From IMG/VR virus record IMGVR_UViG_3300021959_006010, positions 124,001 to 188,000 of that record: a stretch of DNA of 64,000 bases. One strand, written 5' to 3'. The notes beneath the pieces are model-generated. The model did no database searches, was not told the origin of the DNA, and was given only the letters and a program-made list of their open reading frames with translations. The position numbers were made by a program, and so were the translations under genes. Below, one piece after another: positions 4,495-47,538 of this stretch (position 1 is the stretch's first letter; each line of letters begins with the position of its first letter).

Positions 4495-4606
4495 AGACTT
4501 TACCCTCTACTTTAACTGCTAATTTTGTTCCACGATTTGTAACAACAGTGACTTTGTTGCCACTGTTGTTTGTTGAAACCGTTTTTTCTTCCGATTTTTT
4601 CGTCAT
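4475..4606 (-). CDS. Small basic hypothetical protein (43 aa)
   Basis: Hand translation MTKKSEEKTVSTNNSGNKVTVVTNRGTKLAVKVEGKVYGKTNN; TAATG stop/start coupling to the upstream gene. Confidence 0.45.
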   Translation of the reverse strand: MTKKSEEKTVSTNNSGNKVTVVTNRGTKLAVKVEGKVYGKTNN

Positions 4607-19500: not shown

Positions 19501-22500
19501 TTTTGGTAATACTGCAAGTGTTGTTCCGACAATTAGCAATGTAAGCGGTAATACTATTACTTTTGCTTCAGCACACGGTTTCCAATCAGGCGAAGAAGTT
19601 GAATATAATTCAAACGGCAATGTAGAAATTGTAGGTCTACTAAACGAAATGACTTACTTTGTAAGTGTTCCAAACACTACTCAAATACAAATTTTTAATG
19701 ATGCCGATTTTACTAAACCAGTAGTAGATTTAGATGCATCGCCTACAAGTGGTACACACGAGTTTAAGTCAGGGTATGAAGAATTTTATGTAACTGAAGT
19801 CGTTAGTTCGCATAATATCTACCAAACACTTACAATACCTGCCGGAACTTACACAATCACACCAGGTGATACTATCCAAGCAACTGATGGCGCTGATACA
19901 ATTAGTGCAACTATTTACAGCTACGACTCAGGTACTAACGAGCTAGTAGTAAGTGTTGAACTTGTACAAAGTGGACAAACAACAGTAAGAAATGAGTTTA
20001 CAACTAACAGTGTTATTGATGCAGGCGAAATAGCAGGCGGTACAGTAAATGTTCTTGGCGTAGCAAACAGAAGAGATTTGTATAGTTCAGAAGTTGCTAT
20101 TATTAGTACAGAAAACAGACCAATGCAAACTATCGGTAGTACTGCGTTTAATCAAATTTACTTACATAGACCTTCGATTGTTAACAGTTCTGCACACACA
20201 TGGGAATATGCAGGTTCAGGTACAGACTATAATGCTCTACCACAGAACGGCGGACAAACAGTTGAGTACTTTGAACAAGTAAGTACACTTCCGGGTCGTG
20301 TTTATACATCAGGTACTAACGAACTTGGCGACTTTAAAGTTGGTGATTTTGTTAGAGCGTTTAACAGAACAGGCAACATTAACTTTAAAAACAAAGTTAG
20401 TATTGGTGAGCTTGACTCACTTGCATTAAGTCTAAGTTCTGGTGTTGTAGTTGACGAAATTTCAACTGATATTGATTTAGGTGACAACGAAATTGGCGGA
20501 CCGCAGCATAGTAGACTTGTTACTCAGCTAGCTGCAAGAAGCTTTATTGACAACAGACTTGGTAACTTTATCGACCAAAACTTGTCAACCAATGCTGTGC
20601 CAAATGCTGTTGTTCAATTAAACGGACAAGGTCAAATTAATGCGGAACTTATTCCTCCGTCAAGTGGTACAAGTGCATTTAGACTAGACGAATATAATGC
20701 ACGTTTAGAACTCCACGAAGATATTCCAAGCAACGATCTAAAATCAGGCGACATTGTAATTGAAGAATATCAAGAGACAGTTATTAACTTAACTGGTAAT
20801 GTTACTGTTGTTGCAGGCGAAACTGTAACACAAGCAAATAGCGCCGCAACTGGTACTGTTAAAACAAGTGTAACAAATGGTTCTACTATTAGAGTAATTG
20901 CTCCATTTAGTGGTACATTTAATCTAACAGACGAACTTACAGGGTCAACTAGTGGAGCATTAGGTGCTAATAGTGTCCCAACTGTTGTAAGCGGACCTAA
21001 CGATGTAACAGACAACTATTTCTTAGCAACTGCAAATGCAAGTCAGTTCTTAGTATTAGATCCAGCTGACACATATGACTTTACTGATATAATTGCAAAC
21101 TCAACACCTGTTACAGGAGCACTAACAGGCGCAACAGGTACTGCTACAGAACACAGAACAGGTGTTGTTACAAGTGTTGATGTAAATAACTTACTTGCAG
21201 GTTCAGGATATTTAACCCCTGGTGCATACAATGACGTAGCTCTTACAAGTGTTACAGGCACAGGTACAGGCGCTCTAGCAGATATTGTTGTAAATGGCGC
21301 AGGTCAGGTTGACAGTATTGATATTACATTTGGCGGTAGTGGTTATGCTGTAGGAGACGAACTAAGTGCAGCCGATAACGACATAGGTGGCCAAGGCGGT
21401 GGCGGCACTGACTTTAGTGTAGATGTATTAAGCATTGAAAATAGATTGTATATTGATCTAGAACCTACTATTGGTATACAGTTTAATGCATCTGATATTA
21501 ATGTAGAATTTACAGTTGACGATAATGCTACTGATTTTACTATTAACCAAACTGCAGAAACAAACTTCGGATTTGATGCTGCTGATGTTGGAGTTGGAGG
21601 CGATGTAACTTACTCAAACAGTAGAATTACACTAACAGCACACGGCATGGCAGACGGTGATCCTGTACGTTATGATTCCGGCGCCAATCCAACAATAGGA
21701 AGTTTAACAAACGGCGATACATATTTTGTTAAAGTTATTGACGCAGACACTATCGAACTTTATACTAATTACGGCTTAAACAGCAAAGTTACATTTATTA
21801 GTTCAAGCACAGGGTCGCATCAATTAAAAATTGATTTTGTTAACTTAACTGACGAATTTTTCTATGCTCCTGCACACGGACTAACAGCAGGACAAGCAAT
21901 TCAATTTAATGCTACAACACCTGTAGTAGGTATTACAGACGGCGATTATCTGTTTGCAGGTAGTATTACTACAAATGCATTTACATTACACAGTGCAAGA
22001 GGTAGCGCATTAGATAGTGTAAACGGTATTACTGTAAATCCAGTAAATTTAACTGCTGACGGTAGTGGTAATGCAACAATTACTATTCAAAATGTTGAGA
22101 TAGTAGGCGAAGTTAACACTAGCGGAAAAGAAGAAAGCAGCTGGAGTAATCTAAGTGCGACAACAATCGATGCTGAAGATATTGTAAGTGGTATTGTTAG
22201 CACATCAAGATTGGCAACAGGTAGTGCAAATAACTTAACAGTCCTACGAGGAGACTCGACTTGGAGTTTTGCTGTACAAGGTATGGTTCCAGAGTTTCCT
22301 GTTACACTAACAGGTCAATCTTATAATGATGGTGTTAAAGATGTTTACTACAACGAAGTAGAAGTAAGTGTAGAACTAGCAAACTATGATAATCCTGTTG
22401 CACCAAGTGCAGGAACAGAAACTGTAGGTGTTGCAGCATTTGATTTTAACCACTTTAACATTGACGCAAATGGACTAGTAACAACTAAAACACCTGCTAA

Positions 22501-24970
22501 CGGCGGCGTGATTGATGCTGACAAACTAGACGGTCAACAAGGAAGTTACTATCTAAATCCAGTCAATTTGTCAAGAGCTGTTCCTATAGAAAACGGTGGT
22601 ACAAATTTAAGCAGTTATACACAAGGCGATCTACTATATGCAGCAACTAACATAGGTACTGGATCATTTACCGAAACCCTAAGTACACTAGCAATAGGTG
22701 CTGCAAATAGTGTACTACAAAGCAACGGAACAGTACCTACTTGGACTGATACACTAACACTTGCAGACTTAACTGTAGGCAACATTCAAGTTGCTGTAAC
22801 AGGTGACAACGAAATTGATACAACTAGTGGTAACTTAACACTTGATTCAGCTGGCGGTACTGTTGAGATTGATGATAACCTTACTGTTGCTGGAAACTTA
22901 ACAGTTAATGGTACAACAACGACTGTTAATAGTACAACTGTAACAATAGATGATCCGATCTTTACACTAGGCGGTGACACAGTACCTACTACTGATGATA
23001 ATAAAGACCGCGGTATTGAGTTTAGATGGTATGATACTCCTACAACAACTGCAAAGGTTGGTTTCTTTGGATTTGATGATAGCACTGGCAAATTTACATT
23101 TATTCCAGATGCAACAAACACAAATGAAGTGTTTAGTGGTACAGCAGGCGATGTAGCATTCAACGACGGTGCATTTACTAGTATTACATCAGGCAGCATA
23201 ACTGTTACCGGTGATACATCACTAGAAGGAAATGTTACACTAGGCAATGCAGCAGCAGATAGAATTACATTTACTGGTCAAATTGCTACAGATCTTGTGT
23301 TCCAAGGTGCAACCGATGACACATTTACAACAACATTAGCAATTACAGATCCAACTACACCAAGTAACACAATTACATTCCCAGATGCAAGTGGTACCGT
23401 TGCAGTAAGTGTAACTGATACCACAACAACTACACAAGGTGATTTAAATTTAGACTTTACCTTAAGTGCTGCCGGTAATGTAAGTGCAACAGGCGATGCA
23501 CACGGACTAGCAACAGGTGATAGTCCAACATTCGCTGGTTTAACAATCAATGGCTCAAGTGTAGTATTTGAAGGTGCAACTGCTAACGACTTCGAAACAA
23601 CTCTAACAGTTACAGATCCAACTGCTGACAGAACTATCACGTTCCCAAATGCAGATGGTACAGTAGTTGTAAGTGCTGGTACTAGTGCTACACAAAGCGG
23701 ATTAGATTTATCCATAAGTGCAGCAGGTCAAATCAGTGGTAGTGCCGAAGGACTTGCTGCAACAGATAGTCCAACATTTGCAGGATTGACTATTAACGGT
23801 AATACTATTGTACTCGAAGGTGCAACAGAAGATGCATTTGAGACTACACTTAACGTAGTTGATCCAACAGCAACGAGAACTATTAACATACCAAACAATA
23901 GCGGTACAATGGCTGTTGCTGTAGACAACACTACAACAACTACACAAGGTGATCTAAACGTTACTATGGGTCTAAGTGCTACCGGTGTAGTAACAGCAAG
24001 CGGTGACGCACATGGACTAGCAACAGGTGATAGTCCAACATTTGCCGGATTAACAATTAATGGTTCGAACATAGTATTCGAAGGTGCTACTGCAAATGCA
24101 TTCGAAACATCGTTTGTAATTACAGATCCTACAGCAGACAGAACTATTACTTTCCCAGATAGTAGTGGTACTGTTGCATTTATTAGCGGTAGTGACATTT
24201 TAACTATTAATGCAAACTCAGGTACTAGTACACTACAATCAGGTGACACACTAACTATCACAGGCGGAACATATTTAACTGCTGGTGTATCCGGCGACAC
24301 AGTAACTATAAATCATGATAACACTACTAGAACAGATACAACAAGTACCGATGCTCCGTCACATGGTGGTACCTTTGAAGCAGTTACAAGTGTTACAACA
24401 AATGCAACAGGTCATGTAACAGCTATTGATGTTTCTACTATTACAATACCAGCAGAAGCAGACACATTGAGTAGTGTTCTTGGTAGAGGAAATACTGCTA
24501 ATACAAACATACTTCCTGACTCAACAGCTAACAATCGAAACATCGGTAGTGCAACTGCTATTTGGAATACTGTATACGCTACAACATTTGATGGTACTGC
24601 AACACAAGCACAATACGCTGACTTAGCAGAAAAATATCTAGCAGATGACATCTATGGTCCAGGTACTGTAATAGCAGTTGGCGGCGATGCAGAAGTAACA
24701 GCAGCGCACGACGAAATTGCACACAGCGTACTAGGTGTTGTAAGTACTGCTCCTGCGTTCTTAATGAACAAGGATTTAGTAGATGGCACTGCAATTGCAC
24801 TTAAAGGTCGTGTACCAGTTAAGTGCATAGGTACTGTACGCAAAGGTGACAGACTAGCACCAAGCCACTTTGCAGGTTATGCTACTGTCGACAACAGTCG
24901 TACAGCGTGGAGTTTTGCTATTGCACTTGAAGATGGAGAAGATGGTTTAGTAGAAGCAATTATTCTTTAA
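16574..24970 (+). CDS. Giant tail-fibre/appendage protein: beta-helix, fibre repeats, C-terminal peptidase-G2-type chaperone
   Basis: 2798 aa; IMVASGDYVEQNPILLGDDISIVGDNLRRTVIRP; PYIQNCSVISF; C-term QYADLAEKY...IALKGRVPVKCIG. Confidence 0.75.
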   Translation: MATEAVWYDIFRNLTLKVKSDGSTIDTIVADEYKDTLTINQGLGVAFNPSAAGDEFDIDVDYQLYVPVGTTTVRLQDVNSNTRDVKLTPGSGVFISRLADDELAFTSYGVAENDNLHTVTKRGAITTNKLIINDLEIGDITSTPGVDGFSVLGVEFQGDGTLDNPARLLPAYVGITDPTYTKTYEFSVGAAGIFGYSASYLPPLNLTTGSIVLEREDPLNPGVWAPIAQQSGTTAGVTYQLSNTYAESYTGGTVNYRITVSWTGNTSQVRVDLNLTYEVYDVATNVLLETDTANNRVFLSGNVGIDEANPLVSLVINRTDAIALPKGITAEQPTGADGYIRYNTQTNKFEGFSNGFWNELGSVSDVDLDTYITAELNPGTDDDTLYFYNAFANSLSLSSTLLDVKNDVLVRINNTTDSTNSTTGALIVDGGASIKKNLTVGSSNTNTVTFNSRVASSFVPEVTATHALGEDALRWSELFVSDAVNVNDYTLPLADGTVNQIVQTDAQGQLFFGDADTFGGNRVYVSAAKGDDANDGITAPVATIARAARIAADLAYSPETTDPTTESETAALRAAAQSIADDTITYVNTTYPTLIYDQAKCNRDVKEIIDSAIYDLRFGGNSRSVAAGEYYYDGTGTLYITGQVSETIDAINYAKSLAITYLTGTRATAIGASFDTVTSIITSLGNAPAKTYGDFITNQITIMVASGDYVEQNPILLGDDISIVGDNLRRTVIRPANENLDMFRVRNSSYITGVVFRDGLVNRIPDYTFRYAISFDNVVDTATSRAGYVNLPVSRPRIFTSPYIQNCSVISFLGGNGVEIDGNLIDTPNIPNSDIEAENPIDLADGVPEQGKSMVANAFTILSFGGVAWRVMNEAYAQIVSCFVIFTGNGCIAQNGGYLSITNSASNFGLFALRASGYSPNAFEFDRGIISGNGIYEVYQTLKFVGLQRAPLEHFIVRVRNNSNIDITDNFNNNSTFGNTASVVPTISNVSGNTITFASAHGFQSGEEVEYNSNGNVEIVGLLNEMTYFVSVPNTTQIQIFNDADFTKPVVDLDASPTSGTHEFKSGYEEFYVTEVVSSHNIYQTLTIPAGTYTITPGDTIQATDGADTISATIYSYDSGTNELVVSVELVQSGQTTVRNEFTTNSVIDAGEIAGGTVNVLGVANRRDLYSSEVAIISTENRPMQTIGSTAFNQIYLHRPSIVNSSAHTWEYAGSGTDYNALPQNGGQTVEYFEQVSTLPGRVYTSGTNELGDFKVGDFVRAFNRTGNINFKNKVSIGELDSLALSLSSGVVVDEISTDIDLGDNEIGGPQHSRLVTQLAARSFIDNRLGNFIDQNLSTNAVPNAVVQLNGQGQINAELIPPSSGTSAFRLDEYNARLELHEDIPSNDLKSGDIVIEEYQETVINLTGNVTVVAGETVTQANSAATGTVKTSVTNGSTIRVIAPFSGTFNLTDELTGSTSGALGANSVPTVVSGPNDVTDNYFLATANASQFLVLDPADTYDFTDIIANSTPVTGALTGATGTATEHRTGVVTSVDVNNLLAGSGYLTPGAYNDVALTSVTGTGTGALADIVVNGAGQVDSIDITFGGSGYAVGDELSAADNDIGGQGGGGTDFSVDVLSIENRLYIDLEPTIGIQFNASDINVEFTVDDNATDFTINQTAETNFGFDAADVGVGGDVTYSNSRITLTAHGMADGDPVRYDSGANPTIGSLTNGDTYFVKVIDADTIELYTNYGLNSKVTFISSSTGSHQLKIDFVNLTDEFFYAPAHGLTAGQAIQFNATTPVVGITDGDYLFAGSITTNAFTLHSARGSALDSVNGITVNPVNLTADGSGNATITIQNVEIVGEVNTSGKEESSWSNLSATTIDAEDIVSGIVSTSRLATGSANNLTVLRGDSTWSFAVQGMVPEFPVTLTGQSYNDGVKDVYYNEVEVSVELANYDNPVAPSAGTETVGVAAFDFNHFNIDANGLVTTKTPANGGVIDADKLDGQQGSYYLNPVNLSRAVPIENGGTNLSSYTQGDLLYAATNIGTGSFTETLSTLAIGAANSVLQSNGTVPTWTDTLTLADLTVGNIQVAVTGDNEIDTTSGNLTLDSAGGTVEIDDNLTVAGNLTVNGTTTTVNSTTVTIDDPIFTLGGDTVPTTDDNKDRGIEFRWYDTPTTTAKVGFFGFDDSTGKFTFIPDATNTNEVFSGTAGDVAFNDGAFTSITSGSITVTGDTSLEGNVTLGNAAADRITFTGQIATDLVFQGATDDTFTTTLAITDPTTPSNTITFPDASGTVAVSVTDTTTTTQGDLNLDFTLSAAGNVSATGDAHGLATGDSPTFAGLTINGSSVVFEGATANDFETTLTVTDPTADRTITFPNADGTVVVSAGTSATQSGLDLSISAAGQISGSAEGLAATDSPTFAGLTINGNTIVLEGATEDAFETTLNVVDPTATRTINIPNNSGTMAVAVDNTTTTTQGDLNVTMGLSATGVVTASGDAHGLATGDSPTFAGLTINGSNIVFEGATANAFETSFVITDPTADRTITFPDSSGTVAFISGSDILTINANSGTSTLQSGDTLTITGGTYLTAGVSGDTVTINHDNTTRTDTTSTDAPSHGGTFEAVTSVTTNATGHVTAIDVSTITIPAEADTLSSVLGRGNTANTNILPDSTANNRNIGSATAIWNTVYATTFDGTATQAQYADLAEKYLADDIYGPGTVIAVGGDAEVTAAHDEIAHSVLGVVSTAPAFLMNKDLVDGTAIALKGRVPVKCIGTVRKGDRLAPSHFAGYATVDNSRTAWSFAIALEDGEDGLVEAIIL
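23295..24175 (+). repeat. About 3.5 tandem copies of an ~85 aa unit in the fibre
   Basis: FEGAT..FETTL..TDPTADRTITFP..SGTV...GLAT.DSPTFAGLTING recurs in A-B-A-B order; DNA ggactagcaacaggtgatagtccaacatt repeated. Confidence 0.85.
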
Positions 24971-33736: not shown

Positions 33737-33811
33737 TGGAGTGAGCGGCGAGACTCGAACTCGCATGAGACAGATTTGCAATCTGTTGCCTAACCTTTCG
33801 ACCACGCTCAC
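33737..33811 (-). tRNA. trnC: tRNA-Cys(GCA)
   Basis: GTGAGCG/CGCTCAC acceptor stem, U73, CCA encoded, ACAGA-TTGCAAA-TCTGT, GTTCGAG T-loop. Confidence 0.95.
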
Positions 33812-34125
33812 ACTGTATATTCTACTTCTGGTATGCCTATTTTTTCAATTGCGTGTTGGCATACACGACACGGCTTTGCTAATCTAGGATTACCATCTCT
33901 GTCATAGCGTTCGATTACAATCTTTCTGATTGCAGTCCAATCTTTGCATTTACGCAGAGCGTCAATTTCTGCGTGTAGGAAAATTGCATCAGGCTTACCT
34001 GCTTCAACTGCAAACTTACCTTGCAGTGGATGGCTCTTTGTGTAACTGTTTGTACCAACTGCTAACTTGCGTCCTCGCTTGTCATACAGTGTTGCAGTTA
34101 AATTAAATTCGCCTCTGTTTTGCAA
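33808..34125 (-). CDS. Zinc-dependent deaminase (CDA/dCMP/TadA superfamily)
   Basis: HAE...PCRVC; TTG start with AAGGA RBS. Confidence 0.85.
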   Translation of the reverse strand: MQNRGEFNLTATLYDKRGRKLAVGTNSYTKSHPLQGKFAVEAGKPDAIFLHAEIDALRKCKDWTAIRKIVIERYDRDGNPRLAKPCRVCQHAIEKIGIPEVEYTV

Positions 34126-34144
34126 TAGTCCTATCCTTTAAAAC

Positions 34145-34222
34145 TGGTCGGGGATGCAGGATTCGAACCTGCGGCTTTTCCGCCCCAAACGGAACACTCT
34201 GACCAAACTGAGCTAATCCCCG
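34145..34222 (-). tRNA. trnP: tRNA-Pro(UGG)
   Basis: CGGGGAT acceptor stem, TTCCG-TTTGGGG-CGGAA, CCA encoded. Confidence 0.95.
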
Positions 34223-34296
34223 TGGCATAGGTGGAGGGAGTCGAACCCCCATTAACGGTTTTGGAGACCGCTGTGTTGCCATTACACCACACCCAT
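34223..34296 (-). tRNA. trnW: tRNA-Trp(CCA)
   Basis: GCGGT-CTCCAAA-ACCGT, G73, CCA encoded. Confidence 0.95.
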
Positions 34297-34332
34297 AAAA
34301 AAAGCCCCTAACATTATTAGTGCTAGGGGCTT
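34297..34332 (-). terminator. Intrinsic terminator immediately upstream of tRNA-Trp (attenuator terminator)
   Basis: GCCCCTAGCA-ctaataa-TGTTAGGGGC followed by T7. Confidence 0.88.
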
Positions 34333-34354
34333 GTCAACGTAATAAAAAGTCACG

Positions 34355-34417
34355 TCAAGACATACCCCTGCATCCTGGAGGCCAACAAGTAATGTTTGTT
34401 GTGTTAGTCTTGAACAT
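34355..34417 (-). CDS. Putative attenuator leader peptide MFKTNTTNITCWPPGCRGMS
   Basis: AAAGGA RBS 7 nt before ATG; consecutive TGT TGG CCT CCA codons; last codons overlap the antiterminator arm. Confidence 0.75.
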   Translation of the reverse strand: MFKTNTTNITCWPPGCRGMS

Positions 34418-34446
34418 GTATCTATCCTTTCATTTAGTATGCGTAT

Positions 34447-34475
34447 ACTATAACTTATTTATCTCTGTGTGTCAA
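34447..34475 (-). promoter_or_regulatory. Sigma70 promoter, with embedded ATAAATA, driving the leader and tRNA-Trp/Pro/Cys cassette
   Basis: TTGACA-17-TATAGT; ATAAATA at 34456-34462 within the spacer. Confidence 0.85.
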
Positions 34476-34645
34476 CCGTTTTTTGAATTATTTTCTTCTA
34501 TTTTACATCCGGCTTTAATACCACAATGTGGACAACTAAACTGATACCTATCAATTTTCATTTTTTCCATTGTAGCATATGTAAACCAGTTCTTGCAATT
34601 TCCGCAAGTTAGATGCCAAATAGTTTCTTTTACTGCTTTGAACAT
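34472..34645 (-). CDS. Small zinc-ribbon protein (57 aa)
   Basis: Hand translation MFKAVKETIWHLTCGNCKNWFTYATMEKMKIDRYQFSCPHCGIKAGCK...; two CxxC. Confidence 0.65.
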   Translation of the reverse strand: MFKAVKETIWHLTCGNCKNWFTYATMEKMKIDRYQFSCPHCGIKAGCKIEENNSKNG

Positions 34646-34661
34646 AGTTTACTTTCTTTTA

Positions 34662-34737
34662 TGGTGCCGGTGCACGGACTCGAACCGCGGACCTACTGAT
34701 TACAAATCAGTTGCTCTACCAGCTGAGCTACACCGGC
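34662..34737 (-). tRNA. trnT: tRNA-Thr(UGU)
   Basis: GCCGGTG acceptor stem, ACTGA-TTTGTAA-TCAGT, CCA encoded. Confidence 0.95.
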
Positions 34738-34743
34738 TAAAGT

Positions 34744-34905
34744 TTATTCTGTTACTTCCTCTACAGGTGCAACATAACCTCTTTTATTTAGTTCCGCAAC
34801 TGCTTTGCTTTTGTGTTTACGGTTGTTATTATCTTGCGATGCACGTACTAGAGCTTCGTTGCTCATTGTGCTTACTTTTACTTCGTTAATCTTTGGCGAT
34901 GCCAT
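34744..34905 (-). CDS. Small hypothetical protein (53 aa)
   Basis: MASPKINEVKVSTMSNEALVRASQDNNNRKHKSKAVAELIKRGY...; GAGGA RBS. Confidence 0.6.
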   Translation of the reverse strand: MASPKINEVKVSTMSNEALVRASQDNNNRKHKSKAVAELNKRGYVAPVEEVTE

Positions 34906-34928
34906 AAGTATTTCCTCGTTAAGTTATT

Positions 34929-35003
<75 letters not shown>

Positions 35004-35009
35004 ATTGTA

Positions 35010-35100
35010 TGGCGGAAACGGAGGGATTCGAACCCTCGGTACGCTTATCACGTACGGCTCCTTAGCAGGGAGCTGGTTTCAGCCACTCACCCACGTTTCC
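35010..35100 (-). tRNA. trnS: tRNA-Ser(GCU)
   Basis: GCTCC-CTGCTAA-GGAGC, long variable arm, CCA encoded. Confidence 0.95.
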
Positions 35101-35169
35101 TATAAAACATATCCCCGCTTTATCAGATACGTTGCATCAGCTATACTGTATGCAGGATATGTTTTAACT

Positions 35170-35245
35170 TGGCTCCCCGAGCTGGACTCGAACCAGCGAC
35201 ATACGGATTAACAGTCCGGTGTTCTACCAACTGAACTATCAGGGA
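35170..35245 (-). tRNA. trnN: tRNA-Asn(GUU)
   Basis: TCCCTGA acceptor stem, CGGA-CTGTTAA-TCCG, CCA encoded. Confidence 0.95.
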
Positions 35246-42217: not shown

Positions 42218-42268
42218 AATGTGCCTCTATGTGTTTGCCTAAGTTATGTATATACTATAACACCGAAC

Positions 42269-42748
42269 CTAATCGATGTCAACCGAATCAAAGAATTTTT
42301 CAAAAATAATTTCTAAAGTTTCTTCGTCATAAGGAAACGTTCCGTCAAAACGATAATGATATCTAAGTCCGTCAGCACATACAATATTTTTTTCTACAAT
42401 ATGACGTAGGTCCTCTCTTCCACATAATAATCTCTCACGACATAGTTCAATATTATCTTGCATAAGATCAACACCATAAATGTTACTAAGTGCGTGTTCG
42501 AACGTGCTACCATTCTCCATCTTACGTATAAGTATTTCGCCTAAAAATTGTCCATCACCGCAACTCGGTTCAAGATATGTTTTTGTAGGATCTGTAAACA
42601 ACTCTCGCGGAAGTTGATCAAGTACTTCGTTTACAAGTTCAGTTGGCGTAAAAACTTCGCCAGTTGATTTAACTCTAACTTCTTCTCGTTCTATTCCACT
42701 CATATACGATCTATTTCGTATGTGATTTTTTATCTTCTTCAGATCCAA
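42269..42748 (-). CDS. Short N6-adenine methyltransferase-like protein (motifs X, I-III only)
   Basis: STGEVFTP, YLEPSCGDGQFL, YGVDLMQDN; no NPPY motif. Confidence 0.75.
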   Translation of the reverse strand: MDLKKIKNHIRNRSYMSGIEREEVRVKSTGEVFTPTELVNEVLDQLPRELFTDPTKTYLEPSCGDGQFLGEILIRKMENGSTFEHALSNIYGVDLMQDNIELCRERLLCGREDLRHIVEKNIVCADGLRYHYRFDGTFPYDEETLEIIFEKFFDSVDID

Positions 42749-43997
42749 TTTCTTGTACCTTTTTTAATTCTTCAGGAGTTAGATTAAAAATAGTTGCAAT
42801 GTTAATATCTTGTGTGAGATCAATCTTTTTCAAGTATTTTAAAAACTTGATATTAGGAGCACGACCTTCTTGAGTAATAACTTTAAAGAATTTACAAAGA
42901 TCAGAAACACATAGTTCTTTTAGCGATTCTGCTTCTTTTGCTGTCTTTGTGCTGTAAGAAATTACCCCGTGTCCGCCCAAAGGATGCTGTTGACAACCTG
43001 ACAGCATGTTTCCGTTATAATCAATAACGTAACTAGTTCCAAGCATTGCAGTGATAAACTTTGGTCCTCTTGGATCAAATCCTTCGTTTTGTTTCTTTAA
43101 TTTTTCTAGCTTTTTTTCTGTTACTGTGACTTGATAAGTTACTGGGTTATTGCCTGCTTTGATTCCGCCAATTGCAGTAAATTCTCCATTAGGATCTTCT
43201 ACAAAATTATTTTTATCAAACTTACCAATATCGGCACTAGTACCGTTGTAATTATTAGGTCCATCGCTATCAAAACACTTGTCTACGATTGACATTACTA
43301 CTGGATCGGCAGCATACTTCTTTAGTTGTAACATTTTATAAGTATCGTGCTTTATAGTACCTTCGTCGGAAAGTTCTATATAGCTGTCTTTAAAATTTGT
43401 AGTTTTTTGTACAACTGAGTATCCGATTTCAACACCAATGTTTGGAAAATGTTTTTGTACACGATTACCTTTTGAAACCATATGCACAGTTCCAGCTCGT
43501 TCCATATTTGTACCATCTACTTTATGTCCAAACAACCCTGGAAAAAGAGTAGGAGGAGTAATTAAAGCAACATATCCTCCGTCTTTAACTAAGTTATACG
43601 ACTTATTATAAAAATGCTGATAAATTGCATTCTTGCCGTTTGGATGCTTAAATGGAGGGTTGCCTATTACTACGTCAAATTGCATATCAGTTTTCCATTC
43701 TAAAAAGTCTGATTTAATAACATTTTCAAAACCTTTGTTTTTTAAATCGTTAGTAAACACTTTGTACTTATCGGTCAAGTAAATGCTATTTTTAATGTCT
43801 TGAACCGAACGTCCAAGACGAAGCATACGTTGTGCAACTGCGTTTGCTTCAGTGGCATGTCCACTTGCAATAGATAAGATTTTTACATTGTCTTTGAGTA
43901 AGAGTGCATCAGGTATGTTTTCGAGGATTTCATCCCATAATTCTTTCGAATCAGGTTTACCTAAAATGCCTTTGGTAAGATCACGTACAAAACGCAT
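42711..43997 (-). CDS. Amino-methyltransferase/specificity protein (Eco57I-like fold) with degenerate motif I
   Basis: FDVVIGNPPF, GGYVALITP; motif I reads SIASGHAT; own promoter TTGACA-17-TATAAT at 44024-44052. Confidence 0.75.
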   Translation of the reverse strand: MRFVRDLTKGILGKPDSKELWDEILENIPDALLLKDNVKILSIASGHATEANAVAQRMLRLGRSVQDIKNSIYLTDKYKVFTNDLKNKGFENVIKSDFLEWKTDMQFDVVIGNPPFKHPNGKNAIYQHFYNKSYNLVKDGGYVALITPPTLFPGLFGHKVDGTNMERAGTVHMVSKGNRVQKHFPNIGVEIGYSVVQKTTNFKDSYIELSDEGTIKHDTYKMLQLKKYAADPVVMSIVDKCFDSDGPNNYNGTSADIGKFDKNNFVEDPNGEFTAIGGIKAGNNPVTYQVTVTEKKLEKLKKQNEGFDPRGPKFITAMLGTSYVIDYNGNMLSGCQQHPLGGHGVISYSTKTAKEAESLKELCVSDLCKFFKVITQEGRAPNIKFLKYLKKIDLTQDINIATIFNLTPEELKKVQEIGSEEDKKSHTK

Positions 43998-44029
43998 AAC
44001 GCCCTCGTTTATTAACTATGTATATTATA

Positions 44030-45370
44030 CTATACAATAAATGGACTGTCAACTGTATTCTTAGAGTTTTGTACAATTACATCTAGGATAGGTTCGTTCA
44101 AAAGATTTCTATCAAGAATCACTTCTACAAAGTCGGGCGAAACACCAAACAAGTCTTCAAACTCTTCTGCATCTTCTGTGTCATTACCGATTATTTGAAT
44201 ACATTCTCTATAGGTATTTCCTGCGTTAGCAAGATTGTAAACACTAGTTGCACTCATATTGAGAGATCTAACTGCATCATTGATAAGTTTTTCAAGAGCA
44301 ATTTTTTCGTTATCGGTTAATTTTGTTCTTTCAGTATCACCTTCTGTTATTCTATTTTTAGCCTTATTGATAGCGTTTCGTTTTTGCTTCTCAGAAGCAG
44401 ATGCTTTAACATTTGCAATGTCTTCAATGATATCTAAAACACTTTCAACGTCAACAGATACATCTGCAATACGTAATAGGTTTTCGTTATCTCCAAGTAT
44501 TTTAAACAAGTCTTCTTCGGTAACTTCAACGGCTGTACCGTAACGTACCTTAAAACAATCAATGCTAGATAGTACAAAACTTTGCGCACTTGGAAAGTCT
44601 AAATTTTCGCTTTTTTGAACCATTACAATTTCGTCAACAAGCAAACGCTCGATGTTCTCTGAACGGTTAGGATCAAAGCTCAAATCTAAAATATGTCCAT
44701 ACTCTTTAAAATTGCCGGAGTAAGTTTTGCCCGGAGTAAGACAACGGCTTACTTTTTGTTGTGTGGAATCTACACTTCCGCGATCATATGCAACGACAGT
44801 TGCTTGAATTTCCGAAATGCTGTAGCTACGTGAGCCCATTTGATTAGCAATAATAATTACACCTTCTTTGCCTGCCATACGTGCTTCGTTAATTTCTTTA
44901 GTAGTTTCGTATTGTGCTTGCTTATTGCTAGTGTAGTCGCCGTTAAGAATCTTAATATGATAATTAGGAATTGCACGTTCTGCAATTTCTTTAATCTGTT
45001 TCATCTCACGCTTGTTTGCACTTACTAACATCATAAAACAATCAATGCTTTCGCCAGTAAGATTGCTCAAGTTAATCTCTTGACGCAAGGGCTCTTCGCC
45101 AGTTAGACTAAGAAACAGTTTAGTAATAAATGCCTTGTTGCCGTTAGGCTTTCCCCAAATTTTAATCCAACTTGGTTGCACAACCTCATCAAACTCTTCA
45201 ACGTCTTTTTTAAGATTGTCTACTTCTAACATATAAAACTTACGTTTAACAATGTTTTCTTCAGTTTGTTCTAGTTGCGAGTATGCAGTATAGATAACAC
45301 CGTCAGCACGACCTGATCCTTTTGCAAGACGTTGTACATTTGTGCCGCTTGCGAAAACTTTAATTAACAT
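44030..45370 (-). CDS. SF2 helicase-like protein, C-terminal part (motifs III-VI)
   Basis: ASGT, IIIANQMGSRSYSI, QQKVSRCLT. Confidence 0.7.
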   Translation of the reverse strand: MLIKVFASGTNVQRLAKGSGRADGVIYTAYSQLEQTEENIVKRKFYMLEVDNLKKDVEEFDEVVQPSWIKIWGKPNGNKAFITKLFLSLTGEEPLRQEINLSNLTGESIDCFMMLVSANKREMKQIKEIAERAIPNYHIKILNGDYTSNKQAQYETTKEINEARMAGKEGVIIIANQMGSRSYSISEIQATVVAYDRGSVDSTQQKVSRCLTPGKTYSGNFKEYGHILDLSFDPNRSENIERLLVDEIVMVQKSENLDFPSAQSFVLSSIDCFKVRYGTAVEVTEEDLFKILGDNENLLRIADVSVDVESVLDIIEDIANVKASASEKQKRNAINKAKNRITEGDTERTKLTDNEKIALEKLINDAVRSLNMSATSVYNLANAGNTYRECIQIIGNDTEDAEEFEDLFGVSPDFVEVILDRNLLNEPILDVIVQNSKNTVDSPFIV

Positions 45371-46188
45371 GTTAAAAACTCCATCTTCTTAACTTGGTTG
45401 TCTGCATGTGTTCCGAAGTCACCTTCGTCTGCAAATACGAAAATGTCATCATTATTAATATTTGCAATCCACTTGTGTTTAGTAGACCATTCGTCAAAGT
45501 CGCCGTGCAATGATACAGGAATAATAATACGTTGGTTGTTGTCAAGTGCATGTATAGCACTCAACTCGTCTTGCACAAGTGCAATATCTAAAAAGTCATC
45601 GAACTGATCAAGCTCATCAATAAAACTACTGTGTACACTAAGCCAGTAAGCAGGTAATAGCATTACACGATTTCCATACTTTTTAGATATCTCATTAAAC
45701 AACATAAGAGCCCAAATAGTTTTACCAAATCGAGGACATAAATTTGCAATTACTGTAGCAATGTCGCCGCATTTCTCAATAATGTCCATTGCTTCGTCTA
45801 ATGCTTTCTTTTGCAACTTACGCAATTTTACTTTGTTACGAATTCGTTTACCTTCAAGTTCTGCAATTAAAGCGTCAATGTATGTATATGCATCTTCAAC
45901 GTTGTTGCCGGGAATCTTAAACCATTCTGTGCCTTTGCCGTCAGTATGGTGCAGTCCTCTTTTAGTAAGAACTTTGTGTAGTTCGTAATCTCGTTTGATT
46001 TTTTGCAAGTTATTCCATGCACCTACGTGTACTTTCGATTCGTACTCGGCTGCGCCGCCTTGTTCGTTCATACGAACTTCAACATCTCGAATACTATCAC
46101 CTACTTTTGTAAGTACATAGCCGTCGAAAAGTTTAATTGCACTTGGATAAGTGTAAGAATATATGTTAATCATGTGTCCCATGTCCAT
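45364..46188 (-). CDS. T5orf172/GIY-YIG-like nuclease fused to SF2 helicase N-terminal part (motifs I-II)
   Basis: TKVGDSIRDVEVRMNEQ...DYELHKVL...GTEWF; CPRFGKT; FADEGDFG; ends 7 nt into the next ORF. Confidence 0.7.
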   Translation of the reverse strand: MDMGHMINIYSYTYPSAIKLFDGYVLTKVGDSIRDVEVRMNEQGGAAEYESKVHVGAWNNLQKIKRDYELHKVLTKRGLHHTDGKGTEWFKIPGNNVEDAYTYIDALIAELEGKRIRNKVKLRKLQKKALDEAMDIIEKCGDIATVIANLCPRFGKTIWALMLFNEISKKYGNRVMLLPAYWLSVHSSFIDELDQFDDFLDIALVQDELSAIHALDNNQRIIIPVSLHGDFDEWSTKHKWIANINNDDIFVFADEGDFGTHADNQVKKMEFLTC

Positions 46189-46598
46189 TTTTTATTGCCA
46201 AGACCTTCTTGCTCTGCCCATCGTACAAATAGTCCGCACTCTCTTCCATGTGCTTCTATTTCCCACGGCTGATCCCAATAATCAGTAGTTGGGCTGATCA
46301 GTTTACCTTGCCATACGTTTTCAGATTTTAGTTCTTTACGGGCATACTGTTTTACATGCACCATTTCGTGTGCAACAGTTTCTAACAGTCTGCGTAATTT
46401 CAACGTGCGATCTACTTCAATTTCAAATGTACGTGTAGTTTCGCTTAAACAATAACCATACGCACCTTTAGGAGATGTTAGCTTAACGGTTATGTCTAGT
46501 GTACGCATACGCGGCATTAACTTCTTAATACAAAAGTTAACAATGCTTTCTACATACTTTTTTTGTGACTGTGTTCCGCCAATTATCGTAAGTTCCAT
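46170..46598 (-). CDS. HExxH zinc metallopeptidase-like protein (SprT-like)
   Basis: AHEMVHVKQY...PWEIEAH; promoter TTGACA-17-TATAAT at 46631-46659. Confidence 0.75.
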   Translation of the reverse strand: MELTIIGGTQSQKKYVESIVNFCIKKLMPRMRTLDITVKLTSPKGAYGYCLSETTRTFEIEVDRTLKLRRLLETVAHEMVHVKQYARKELKSENVWQGKLISPTTDYWDQPWEIEAHGRECGLFVRWAEQEGLGNKKWTWDT

Positions 46599-46667
46599 AG
46601 GAAGGTGCCCGTTTTTGTTAATATAGTATTATTATACGATCAAAAACAGTAAGTGTCAACCAAAGAT

Positions 46668-46886
46668 TTATGTTCTATATATAACGCGGCCTTTAGAAAG
46701 ATCATATGGAGACATTTCTACTGTAACTTTGTCTCCTTGTACTAGACGAATTTTGAATTTTCTCATTTTTCCTCCAGTATATGCAGTTATGATATGCTCA
46801 TTGTCTAATTTTACTTTGAACATTTGATTTGGTAATACTTCAACAATAGTACCGCTTAATTCGAACAAATCTTTGTCTTTGGCCAC
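46668..46886 (-). CDS. infA: Translation initiation factor IF-1
   Basis: [18 protein letters not shown]...[33 protein letters not shown]. Confidence 0.95.
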
Positions 46887-46888
46887 TT

Positions 46889-47077
46889 TTACTCCTCTTT
46901 GTTGATTTTTTCTAAAATCAATGTACCTTGATCGCCCACAGAAATTTTGAGAGTATCTCCCTCTTTTAAGTTTGCTGCTTCAAGAACTTCTGGCGGAATA
47001 TTCATTAGCACATTTTCGTCATCGCCAGGAATGTCTTCAAAAATATCTTCTACTTTATAAACAATTGGTTTTTCCAT
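46889..47077 (-). CDS. AbrB/MazE-like swapped-hairpin DNA-binding protein
   Basis: [23 protein letters not shown]; start MEKPIV. Confidence 0.7.
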
Positions 47078-47103
47078 AGGGTTCTCCTCTGATAAATATT
47101 TAT

Positions 47104-47538
47104 ATGATCGATGCGTATCGTTTAGCATTTTACGATGTAATAAAAGAAACGCAAGCCAAAACAGGATACGAATTACCGGAACACCTTGAGGCTTACGTTG
47201 TTATGCTTTTGGCTCATCATATAGATCATCCTAATTTTTTACCTGAAAAATCATTTGCAGAAGCATACTTAAAACTAGAACGTCCTGGCGATATGAGTGC
47301 AAAAGAACTAGGCGATATTTGTTTGTTTGTTACAGGTGTTTTTCCTACATATGGACGTAAACACGGACTTAATCGTAAATACTATCAAGATATCGGAATT
47401 GGATCTTACGAAATAGTAGCAGAGGTAATGAGTCCTGATTTGTTCTCACAACTTGCTACACATTTCAATTTTTTGTCAGACTTTATAGAAATATCTACTA
47501 GTTCTTCCAAACAGATGCATAGTATCCTTTTCCATTAG
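47104..47538 (+). CDS. Hypothetical helical protein
   Basis: 144 aa; ATAAATA directly upstream. Confidence 0.65.
   Translation: MIDAYRLAFYDVIKETQAKTGYELPEHLEAYVVMLLAHHIDHPNFLPEKSFAEAYLKLERPGDMSAKELGDICLFVTGVFPTYGRKHGLNRKYYQDIGIGSYEIVAEVMSPDLFSQLATHFNFLSDFIEISTSSSKQMHSILFH

What the first reader, a model, noticed from the sequence alone, without database searches (positions are those of the whole stretch)
42269..46659. Phage-borne nuclease-helicase-methyltransferase cassette
Seen: metallopeptidase, T5orf172/GIY-YIG nuclease-helicase, helicase C-part, MTase-specificity protein and short MTase in one direction, bounded by consensus sigma70 promoters, with a separate promoter for the MTase genes. 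Inference: a restriction-modification-like system used against competing phages or host DNA; the separate MTase promoter fits protect-before-cut logic. It does not match a canonical type I, III or ISP layout I can name.
Basis: partly seen in the sequence, partly recalled or inferred. Interest (0 to 1): 0.6.

Follow-up and report, generated by a model that had tools for sequence, protein, structure and literature searches.

The report
Phage Type ISP-like restriction-modification cassette
A T4-like jumbo phage carries a nuclease-motor protein (naturally split into two genes), an adenine DNA methylase and a conserved "half methylase" that together look like a phage-specific restriction-modification machine, and cultured cyanophages carry the same cassette, so it can be tested.

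Summary
The five same-strand ORFs and the consensus promoters are real. The core is a conserved module. It consists of a T5orf172 (GIY-YIG-type) domain fused to an SF2 ATPase, here split after ATPase motif II into 274-aa and 446-aa proteins. These are followed by a complete gamma-class N6-adenine methylase with a hypervariable target-recognition region (428 aa), and then by a translationally coupled 159-aa "half methylase" that has motifs X and I-III but no catalytic motif IV.

The decisive evidence comes from relatives. In 22 of the 150 best representatives the nuclease-ATPase and this same methylase family form one polypeptide of 1099-1192 aa. That domain order, nuclease, SF2 motor, methylase, TRD, is the Type ISP order, with a GIY-YIG-type nuclease where Type ISP has Mrr.

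The helicase is not broken. The split recurs at the same loop in many lineages, each with its own ribosome-binding site and ATG, and both halves are under strong purifying selection. The half methylase follows the methylase in 9 of 10 metagenomic relatives' loci examined, and in the cultured cyanophage S-CAM7. The SprT-like "metallopeptidase" occurs only in the nearest relatives and is not core.

No activity has been shown. Restriction of unmethylated DNA (host or rival phage) is my best inference, at about 0.55. I rate it a new variant of a known kind.

The parts
46631..46659 (-). Perfect consensus promoter (TTGACA-17-TATAAT) ahead of the 142-aa gene and the nuclease-ATPase genes
   Evidence: 12/12 match. 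The window holds 3 such sites against 0.16 expected.
46170..46598 (-). 142-aa HExxH protein, a SprT/IrrE-like minimal metallopeptidase fold. It is an accessory neighbour and not a core part. Its stop overlaps the next gene's ATG as ATGA.
   Evidence: Homologues lie next to the cassette only in L002 and L003; none in L004, L008, L009, L018, L021 or L022.
45364..46173 (-). R-N subunit: T5orf172 (GIY-YIG superfamily) domain plus the first part of RecA lobe 1 of an SF2 ATPase (Walker A GKT, motif II DEGD). The open frame runs up to 46188, but the start conserved in homologues is 46173.
   Evidence: the family-wide near-invariant residues correspond to the GIY-YIG Gly, Arg and Glu (48/49, 52/54, 62/63) and to Walker A Lys (115/115).
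44030..45370 (-). R-C subunit: the rest of lobe 1 from motif III (SGT), RecA lobe 2, and a C-terminal helical domain. It has its own GGAG Shine-Dalgarno and ATG, which overlaps the R-N stop.
   Evidence: SF2 core Z 19-21: RadD, INO80, LlaBIII; pN 0.12-0.17 against pS 0.64-0.74.
44024..44052 (-). Perfect consensus promoter for the methylase pair. The -35 box lies inside the last codons of R-C.
   Evidence: the same position scores 11-12/12 in L002, L003, L007, L004 and L008, and is absent in L009.
42711..43997 (-). M subunit: complete gamma-class N6-adenine DNA methylase (motifs X, I-III, NPPF, V-VIII) with a hypervariable C-terminal TRD.
   Evidence: best folds are CamA, M.TaqI and M.BseCI; pN 0.42-0.44, about three times that of its neighbours.
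42269..42748 (-). Half methylase of 159 aa with motif X (GEVFTP) and motif I (PSCGDGQF) through motif III, and no motif IV. Its TTG start overlaps the end of M by 38 nt.
   Evidence: 69-76% identical among relatives; it follows the methylase in 9 of 10 metagenomic relatives' loci, and in both cultured S-CAM7 isolates.
42254..42282 (-). 11/12 promoter that starts the next, unrelated transcription unit (279-aa gene). It marks the downstream boundary of the cassette.

Best explanation
The cassette is a phage-encoded, ATP-dependent restriction-modification machine of Type ISP-like design, spread here over four genes.

**Proposed mechanism**
- The 428-aa methylase recognises a specific sequence through its variable TRD and marks phage DNA with N6-methyladenine.
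- The two halves of the nuclease-motor protein (274 + 446 aa) reassemble into one SF2 translocase carrying an N-terminal GIY-YIG-type nuclease.
- Working with the methylase/TRD, this enzyme loads at unmethylated sites on host or rival-phage DNA, translocates using ATP, and cuts.
- The conserved 159-aa half methylase is a third, constant subunit. It is probably a SAM-binding partner of the methylase or of the motor.
- The extra consensus promoter in front of the methylase pair raises its dosage relative to the nuclease.

**Shown:** the gene anatomy, the motifs, the folds, the fusions in relatives, the conservation and the selection.

**Inferred:** complex formation, methylation, translocation, cleavage and the target (host or competitor DNA).
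For: 1. **Fusion evidence.** A profile of the nuclease-ATPase family finds 760 representatives. Among the best 150, 22 also carry this same methylase family in the same chain: 17 full-length proteins of 1099-1192 aa, and others with the C-half fused to the methylase.
2. **Linkage beyond synteny.** The pair is adjacent in L002-L009, L021 and L022, while the flanking genes differ.
3. **Catalytic residues are kept family-wide.** GIY-YIG-type Gly 48/49, Arg 52/54, Glu 62/63. Walker A Lys 115/115, motif II Glu 115/115, the motif VI-like Q and R (my assignment) 134-135/135.
4. **Fold.** Foldseek ranks the Type ISP enzyme LlaBIII first for the fused model (E 1.6e-10, 721 columns). VIA gives LlaBIII Z 19.4 with the longest aligned stretch (407 residues), statistically tied with RadD and INO80.
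5. **The specificity part evolves fast.** Phages whose motor is 75-80% identical have methylases only 37-40% identical, with the TRD not alignable, while the half methylase stays 69-76% identical.
6. **The split motor is functional.** The split sits in the same loop in several lineages, each with its own SD and ATG. About ten C-half-only and seven N-half-only representative clusters begin or end at the same profile position. pN is far below pS in both halves.
7. **Expression signals.** Consensus promoters, with the methylase promoter conserved in relatives.
8. **Variable locus in cultured phages.** The same four-gene cassette occurs in cyanophage S-CAM7 isolate 0809CC03, while other isolates of the same species carry alternative helicase/methylase cassettes at that locus. 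This is the pattern expected of conflict genes.
Against: - No enzymatic activity, methylation motif or restriction phenotype is known for any member.
- The SF2 fold match to Type ISP is not better than to repair or remodelling helicases.
- The methylase fold is closest to stand-alone methylases (CamA, M.TaqI), not to the Type ISP methylase domain.
- T5orf172 domains have not, to my knowledge, been shown to cleave DNA in such a context.
- The family was found almost only in phage or metagenome sequence: one 2.5-kb MAG contig among 185,579 species genomes. That scan used only two near-exact peptide patterns. A phage-only range is unusual for restriction-modification systems.
- The role of the half methylase is unexplained, and the complex prediction gave no verdict.
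- PADLOC has no model matching the motor.
Confidence: 0.55

Rival explanations
1. A modification-only machine. The SF2 motor carries the methylase along DNA so that a very large phage genome is methylated quickly and evades host restriction. The T5orf172 domain binds DNA or nicks it for loading rather than restricting it.
For: - Phages commonly carry orphan methylases. The methylase fold is closest to stand-alone or orphan enzymes such as CamA and M.TaqI.
- The family is essentially phage-restricted.
- The hypervariable TRD fits a chase after diverse host restriction specificities equally well.
- The fusions prove coupling of motor and methylase, not cutting.
Against: - The GIY-YIG-type catalytic Arg and Glu are as conserved as the ATPase residues across representatives less than 50% identical to each other. 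That is hard to explain for a mere DNA-binding module.
- No translocase-coupled pure methylase is known to me.
- The domain order is that of restriction enzymes.
Confidence: 0.22
2. A recombination or repair helicase-nuclease (branch migration plus junction cutting, as has been proposed for T5orf172 proteins of jumbo phages) that merely sits beside an unrelated orphan methylase.
For: - Iyer and colleagues suggest a recombination or Holliday-junction-resolvase-like role for T5orf172 proteins (PMC7824862).
- The top VIA match is the repair helicase RadD at Z 20.9.
- The window holds other DNA-metabolism genes: topoisomerase II and ligase.
Against: - Recurrent in-frame fusion to the same methylase family, and adjacency despite changed flanks.
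- The genome already has a separate UvsW-like ResIII/Helicase_C helicase.
- Isolate-to-isolate cassette swapping in cyanophages is not typical of core repair genes.
Confidence: 0.1
3. A decaying remnant: a helicase broken by a frameshift and a truncated methylase fragment, with no current function.
For: - The helicase is in two ORFs that overlap by 7 nt.
- The 159-aa protein lacks the catalytic motif.
- A close relative (L002) has the helicase in one piece.
Against: - The split lies at the same loop in several lineages, with different junctions that each provide an SD and an ATG.
- There are dozens of split clusters.
- pN is 0.12-0.20 against pS 0.64-0.83 for both halves and for the half methylase.
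- The half methylase is present in 9 of 10 metagenomic relatives' loci, including next to fused enzymes.
Confidence: 0.03

Closest known systems
Type ISP restriction-modification enzymes (LlaGI, LlaBIII)
   Same: Same order of modules: N-terminal nuclease, SF2 helicase-like ATPase, gamma-class N6-adenine methylase of the Eco57I family, C-terminal TRD. This order is realised as a single chain in 17 full-length representative relatives. LlaBIII is the first Foldseek hit and has the longest VIA alignment.
   Different: - The nuclease is T5orf172/GIY-YIG-type, not Mrr/PD-(D/E)xK.
- In the window the enzyme is in three polypeptides, with the motor split inside RecA lobe 1.
- There is an extra conserved half-methylase gene.
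- The methylase fold is closest to CamA and M.TaqI.
- It is phage-borne, and it has no biochemistry.
- Sisakova et al. 2012 (PMC3553950) only mention in passing that related enzymes with helicase parts and GIY-YIG nucleases exist.
Type I HsdR / Type III Res-Mod systems
   Same: A nuclease-plus-SF2 motor subunit encoded separately from a methylase that supplies sequence recognition. The nuclease is N-terminal and there is a helical C-terminal domain, as in HsdR. EcoR124I HsdR appears among the Foldseek hits.
   Different: - No HsdS gene, because the TRD is part of the methylase.
- Type III Res has its nuclease at the C-terminus, and Mod is beta-class with an internal TRD.
- The nuclease family differs.
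Stand-alone gamma-class adenine methylases (M.TaqI, CamA, M.BseCI)
   Same: The best structural matches of the 428-aa protein (E 2e-15 to 1e-10). Same motif order X, I-III, NPP[FY], then a C-terminal DNA-recognition domain.
   Different: Those enzymes act alone. Here the methylase is genetically coupled or fused to a nuclease-motor and followed by a half methylase.
Cassettes of cultured T4-like cyanophages (S-CAM7 genes 53-56 of isolate 0809CC03; ACG-2014f)
   Same: True homologues by profile: N-half 319 aa (E 1.6e-20), C-half 448 aa (E 1.9e-32), methylase 353 aa (E 5e-23), half methylase 133 aa (E 7e-20). They are in the same order as in the window.
   Different: - They are distant: Foldseek gives 21-23% identity for the two BFVD S-CAM7 proteins.
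- The split lies about 40-50 residues further along.
- All are annotated as hypothetical proteins.
- Other isolates carry a different ResIII-like protein in that place, annotated as a "type II restriction-modification system restriction subunit".
Circularly permuted or split methylases with the same half-methylase module (Aeromonas phage phiAS5 ORF0215; Vibrio phage PVA23 genes 329/330)
   Same: The 159-aa module (motifs X, I-III) is homologous, with profile E 2.4e-17 and 6e-20.
   Different: - In phiAS5 the module is the C-terminal end of a protein that begins with NPPY, so there it supplies the only SAM-binding half.
- In PVA23 it follows a GIY-YIG-plus-methylase-C-half protein.
- In the window the large methylase already has its own motifs X and I-III.

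Membership tests
Type ISP restriction-modification enzymes | All activities in a single polypeptide | tested here: not met
   In the window the module is three ORFs plus the half methylase. Relatives do meet this feature: 17 full-length fused representatives of 1099-1192 aa.
Type ISP restriction-modification enzymes | N-terminal Mrr-family PD-(D/E)xK nuclease | tested here: not met
   The N-terminal domain matches Pfam T5orf172/MUG113 of the GIY-YIG superfamily. Its conserved residues fit a GIY-YIG pattern.
Type ISP restriction-modification enzymes | SF2 helicase-like ATPase between nuclease and methylase | tested here: met
   Walker A GKT, DEGD and SGT, with a motif VI-like Q/R pair (my assignment), are conserved. 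The two-lobe RecA fold scores Z 19-21, with LlaBIII at Z 19.4 over 407 residues.
Type ISP restriction-modification enzymes | Gamma-class N6-adenine methylase (Eco57I family) followed by a TRD | tested here: met
   Pfam Eco57I E 7.4e-13, NPPF motif, motif order X-I-IV, variable C-terminal region, fold like M.TaqI and CamA.
Type ISP restriction-modification enzymes | Asymmetric site, one-strand methylation, ATP-driven translocation, cleavage on collision of head-to-head enzymes | not testable with these tools
   These are biochemical properties (PMC3553950). Nothing here bears on them.
Type I restriction-modification (HsdR/HsdM/HsdS) | Separate HsdS specificity subunit with two TRDs | tested here: not met
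   There is no S-like gene in the cassette or in relatives. The TRD is the C-terminal part of the methylase.
Type III restriction-modification (Res/Mod) | Res with helicase first and nuclease at the C-terminus; Mod with an internal TRD | tested here: not met
   The nuclease-type domain is N-terminal. The methylase has the gamma order with a C-terminal TRD.
T5orf172 / GIY-YIG superfamily | Profile match and conserved Tyr/Gly ... Arg ... Glu core | tested here: met
   The window protein scores 20.2 bits against a cut-off of 20. Seven of 20 family members match, best E 5.2e-6. Gly 48/49, Arg 52/54 and Glu 62/63 are conserved. Nuclease activity itself was not tested.
BREX / DISARM / MADS (defence systems with Eco57I-type methylases) | Companion genes (PglZ, BrxC, BrxL; DrmA/B/C; mad1-8) | tested here: not met
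   PADLOC gives only generic methylase hits (mad2 E 5.7e-10, MTase_II) for the two methylase genes and nothing for the other four proteins scanned. The neighbours are phage early genes.

The most novel reading that the evidence does not exclude
T4-like marine phages, from jumbo phages to cultured cyanophages, share a previously undescribed phage-specific class of ATP-dependent restriction-modification enzyme.
- It uses a GIY-YIG-type nuclease and tolerates being one, two or three polypeptides.
- It needs a conserved catalytically incomplete half methylase as a third component, for example as a SAM sensor or as a second Mod-like protomer.
- It would give phages that lack hypermodified bases a methylation-based way to tell their own DNA from host or rival DNA, so that the other DNA can be destroyed.
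Probability: 0.3. Interest if true: 0.78.

Novelty: new variant of a known kind. Interest (0 to 1): 0.62.

Why it matters
- **A phage-side restriction system.** If the reading holds, this is a restriction-modification design used by phages rather than against them. It is widespread in marine T4-like phages (760 representative clusters) and invisible to current defence-system catalogues.
- **A testable answer to an open question.** It offers a way to explain how T4-like phages without hydroxymethylcytosine distinguish self from host DNA, and how co-infecting phages exclude each other.
- **Natural protein-engineering examples.** It shows an SF2 motor that works when split inside a RecA lobe, and a methylase half-domain kept as a separate conserved gene.
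- **A laboratory system exists.** Cultured cyanophage S-CAM7 isolates differ at exactly this locus.

Tried and rejected
- **No close relatives in GenBank phages.** Megablast of the cassette and tblastn of the 446-aa protein found nothing.
- **No sequence hit to solved structures.** Neither the single motor protein nor its profile matched anything meaningful in the PDB, and the 142-aa protein matched nothing.
- **No defence-catalogue or naming-model hit.** PADLOC and NCBIfam gave nothing for the motor.
- **UvsW idea rejected.** I considered that the motor is this phage's UvsW. It has no similarity to the cyanophage helicase next to the methylase, and the genome has its own ResIII/Helicase_C helicase elsewhere.
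- **Docking-peptide idea rejected.** The conserved, poorly modelled N-terminal peptide of the methylase (KGILGKPD...) is not a docking peptide. It aligns in pattern with motif X of gamma methylases, by reading.
- **Frameshift idea not supported.** The methylase and the half methylase might have been joined by a +1 frameshift at an A-run. The A-run is not conserved, and relatives keep a TTG or ATG start in the overlap.
- **No second partner for the half methylase.** Only one Eco57I-type methylase and one copy of the half-methylase module were found in the 275 kb held.
- **Complex prediction gave no verdict.** The 428-aa plus 159-aa prediction scored 0.00, which is neither support nor evidence against binding.
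- **Genome scan is a weak test of absence.** The scan of species genomes found one 2.5-kb MAG contig, but the patterns used were near-exact, so this says little about distant bacterial relatives.
- **Literature.** Searches found no description of this cassette.
- **Not used.** The sequencing-run and read-laying tools were not used.
Full report
**Setting.** The window is bases 124001-188000 of a 275-kb IMG/VR virus record judged about 77% complete. Several features mark it as a T4-like jumbo phage:
- a T4 gp9/10-like baseplate protein
- a two-subunit topoisomerase II
- an ATP-dependent ligase
- seven tRNA genes
- two ORFs of about 2,600-2,800 aa
- GC content of about 38%

**Observation.** Five ORFs lie head to tail on the minus strand within 42269-46659. 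Two perfect TTGACA-17-TATAAT promoters (46659-46631 and 44052-44024) and an 11/12 one (42282-42254) are present. The window holds three perfect sites against 0.16 expected, and no shuffle reached three.

**The nuclease-motor**
- The 274-aa protein matches Pfam T5orf172 at threshold and carries Walker A (GKT) and motif II (DEGD).
- The 446-aa protein begins just before motif III (SGT).
- In relative L002 the two are one 726-aa protein.
- An AlphaFold model of that fused form (pLDDT 80, pTM 0.75) shows three parts: an N-terminal alpha/beta domain (residues 1-110), a two-lobe SF2 core (about 111-565) and a helical C-terminal domain.
- Foldseek ranks the Type ISP enzyme LlaBIII first (E 1.6e-10, 721 columns). 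The VIA second look gives RadD Z 20.9, INO80 Z 19.6 and LlaBIII Z 19.4 with the longest aligned stretch (407 residues). These are all tied, so the fold says "SF2 translocase" and no more.
- The genome has a separate UvsW-like helicase, so this is not the phage's UvsW.

**The split is natural**
- In the window, in L003/L007 and in L004-L006, the gene is interrupted in the same loop between motif II and motif III. The junctions differ: an overlap of 7 nt, or a stop plus about 36 nt with a Shine-Dalgarno and an ATG. In L002 it is in frame.
- The word search found dozens of 446-455-aa clusters beside fused ones of 720-760 aa.
- The exhaustive profile search found about ten C-half-only and seven N-half-only representative clusters that begin or end at the same profile position (about 275/284).
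- Both halves show pN 0.12-0.20 against pS 0.64-0.83.
- The helicase therefore needs no repair.

**The methylase pair**
- The 428-aa protein is a complete gamma-class N6-adenine methylase. It has a motif X-like KGILGKPD, a motif I (consensus ACGHGTEA in the family), NPPF, a Rossmann fold at pLDDT about 90, and a C-terminal domain ending in the LTxEE helix. That helix is, to my knowledge, typical of TaqI-type recognition domains.
- Its best structural matches are CamA, M.TaqI and M.BseCI.
- Its middle and C-terminal region is hypervariable. Phages whose motor is 75-80% identical have methylases only 37-40% identical.
- The 159-aa protein has a canonical motif X (GEVFTP) and motif I (PSCGDGQF) and runs through motif III, then stops. 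It has no motif IV.
- It is 69-76% identical among relatives, and its start overlaps the end of the methylase gene.
- It is a paralogue of the first part of the large methylase (E about 1e-8).
- In Aeromonas phage phiAS5 the same module is the C-terminal end of a protein that starts with NPPY, which makes that protein a circularly permuted methylase. In Vibrio phage PVA23 it follows a GIY-YIG-plus-methylase-C-half protein.
- Its role here is open. The complex prediction with the large methylase gave no verdict.

**Linkage of motor and methylase**
- The pair is adjacent in L002-L009, L021 and L022, although the flanking genes differ.
- Decisively, 22 of the 150 best representatives of the motor family carry the same methylase family in the same polypeptide. 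Seventeen are full length at 1099-1192 aa, and three are C-half plus methylase.
- These fused enzymes are again followed by the half methylase (L018, L023, L024). One lies next to a T4 gp2 gene.
- The half methylase follows the methylase in 9 of 10 metagenomic relatives' loci examined, being absent only in L008. It also follows the methylase in both cultured S-CAM7 isolates.
- The SprT-like 142-aa gene is translationally coupled to the motor gene in the window (ATGA overlap). Its homologues are found only in L002 and L003, so it is not core.

**Are the catalytic parts alive?** Across representatives less than 50% identical to each other, conservation is as follows.

| Part | Residue | Conserved |
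|---|---|---|
| GIY-YIG-type domain | Gly | 48/49 |
| GIY-YIG-type domain | Arg | 52/54 |
| GIY-YIG-type domain | Glu | 62/63 |
| ATPase | Walker A Lys | 115/115 |
| ATPase | motif II Glu | 115/115 |
| ATPase | motif VI-like Q and R (my assignment) | 134-135/135 |

Distant fused members still show a literal GIY...FG.G...R pattern.

**Promoters.** The methylase promoter, with its -35 box inside the last codons of the motor gene, is conserved at the same place in L002, L003/L007, L004 and L008 but not in L009. No terminator is predicted between the two promoters on the coding strand. The second promoter should therefore add methylase transcripts rather than make them earlier, and fused relatives have no such promoter. 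The "protect before cut" reading is weak.

**Distribution**
- The family is abundant in metagenomes, including Tara samples, on contigs of up to 345 kb.
- A pattern scan of 185,579 species genomes found one 2.5-kb MAG contig. This is a weak test of absence.
- BFVD structure search puts cyanophage proteins first: ACG-2014f 691 aa (E 1.9e-22), and S-CAM7 448 aa and 319 aa. These are followed by a Hokovirus 1324-aa "adenine methyltransferase" and an uncultured-phage 1138-aa "Eco57I methylase".
- By profile, S-CAM7 isolate 0809CC03 has the same four genes in the same order (319, 448, 353 and 133 aa; E 1.6e-20, 1.9e-32, 5e-23 and 7e-20).
- Isolate 0910CC49 and the ACG-2014f isolates carry other ResIII-like proteins with related methylases and the half methylase at that locus. 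This is isolate-level cassette variation.

**Interpretation**
- The module has the Type ISP domain order with a GIY-YIG-type nuclease in place of Mrr. It comes as one, two or three polypeptides plus a half methylase.
- It fails Type ISP membership on two points: it is not a single polypeptide in the window, and the nuclease family differs.
- It does not fit Type I (no HsdS) or Type III (different domain order).
- I rate an ATP-dependent, methylation-sensitive restriction function at about 0.55, a translocase-coupled modification-only role at about 0.22, a repair helicase with an incidental methylase at about 0.10, and a dead remnant at about 0.03.
- Sisakova et al. 2012 mention in passing that relatives of Type ISP and IIL enzymes with helicase parts and GIY-YIG nucleases exist (PMC3553950). 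I found no description of this phage family.
- Verdict: a new variant of a known kind. It is moderately interesting and directly testable in cultured cyanophages.

Noticed in passing
window 46668-46886 (-): A 72-aa homologue of translation initiation factor IF-1 (Pfam eIF-1a E 3.3e-23, PHROG 30201) is encoded by the phage immediately upstream of the cassette promoter.
   Followed up: no
window 46889-47128 (-): A 79-aa protein with a MazE/AbrB-type antitoxin-like DNA-binding domain (E 1.9e-8). No obvious toxin partner was seen next to it.
   Followed up: no
window 33737-35245 (-): A cluster of seven tRNA genes (Cys, Pro, Trp, Thr, Gly, Ser, Asn). A TTGACA...TATAGT promoter-like site lies inside the cluster at 34447-34475.
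   Followed up: no
window 4606-12519 (-) and 16574-24970 (+): Two giant ORFs of 2637 and 2798 aa with essentially no Pfam match (only a weak DUF5907 repeat). The second lies on the opposite strand in a block where the GC skew is reversed.
   Followed up: partly
L012:3161-4411 (Aeromonas phage phiAS5 ORF0215): A circularly permuted N6A methylase. NPPY sits at residues 11-14 (FDYMIANPPY, residues 5-14), and the motif X/I-III half is at the C-terminus (N6_Mtase profile 20-87 at residues 290-361). It is annotated as hypothetical.
   Followed up: partly
L011:2298-4438 (Vibrio phage PVA23 genes 329/330): A LEM-3-like GIY-YIG domain fused to a methylase C-half, followed by an overlapping half-methylase gene. 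The pair is embedded among 7-deazaguanine (FolE, QueD, QueC) biosynthesis genes.
   Followed up: partly
L010, L025, L027, L028 (Synechococcus phages ACG-2014f and S-CAM7): Isolates of the same cyanophage species carry different helicase/methylase cassettes at one locus, while the half-methylase gene stays constant.
   Followed up: partly
BFVD entries A0A1V0SG34 (Hokovirus, 1324 aa) and A0A1X7C005 (1336 aa): Two BFVD proteins of about 1,330 aa (the first a giant-virus protein from Hokovirus HKV1, annotated as an adenine-specific methyltransferase; the second has no name or organism listed) align structurally over about 755 columns with the phage nuclease-motor model (E 4e-18 and 1.7e-17). This suggests similar motor-methylase fusions in a eukaryotic giant virus.
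   Followed up: no
L023:4589-5059 (-): A TnsA-like endonuclease gene lies on the opposite strand directly after the fused enzyme and its half methylase, next to a T4 gp2 homologue. It may be a mobile endonuclease insertion.
   Followed up: no
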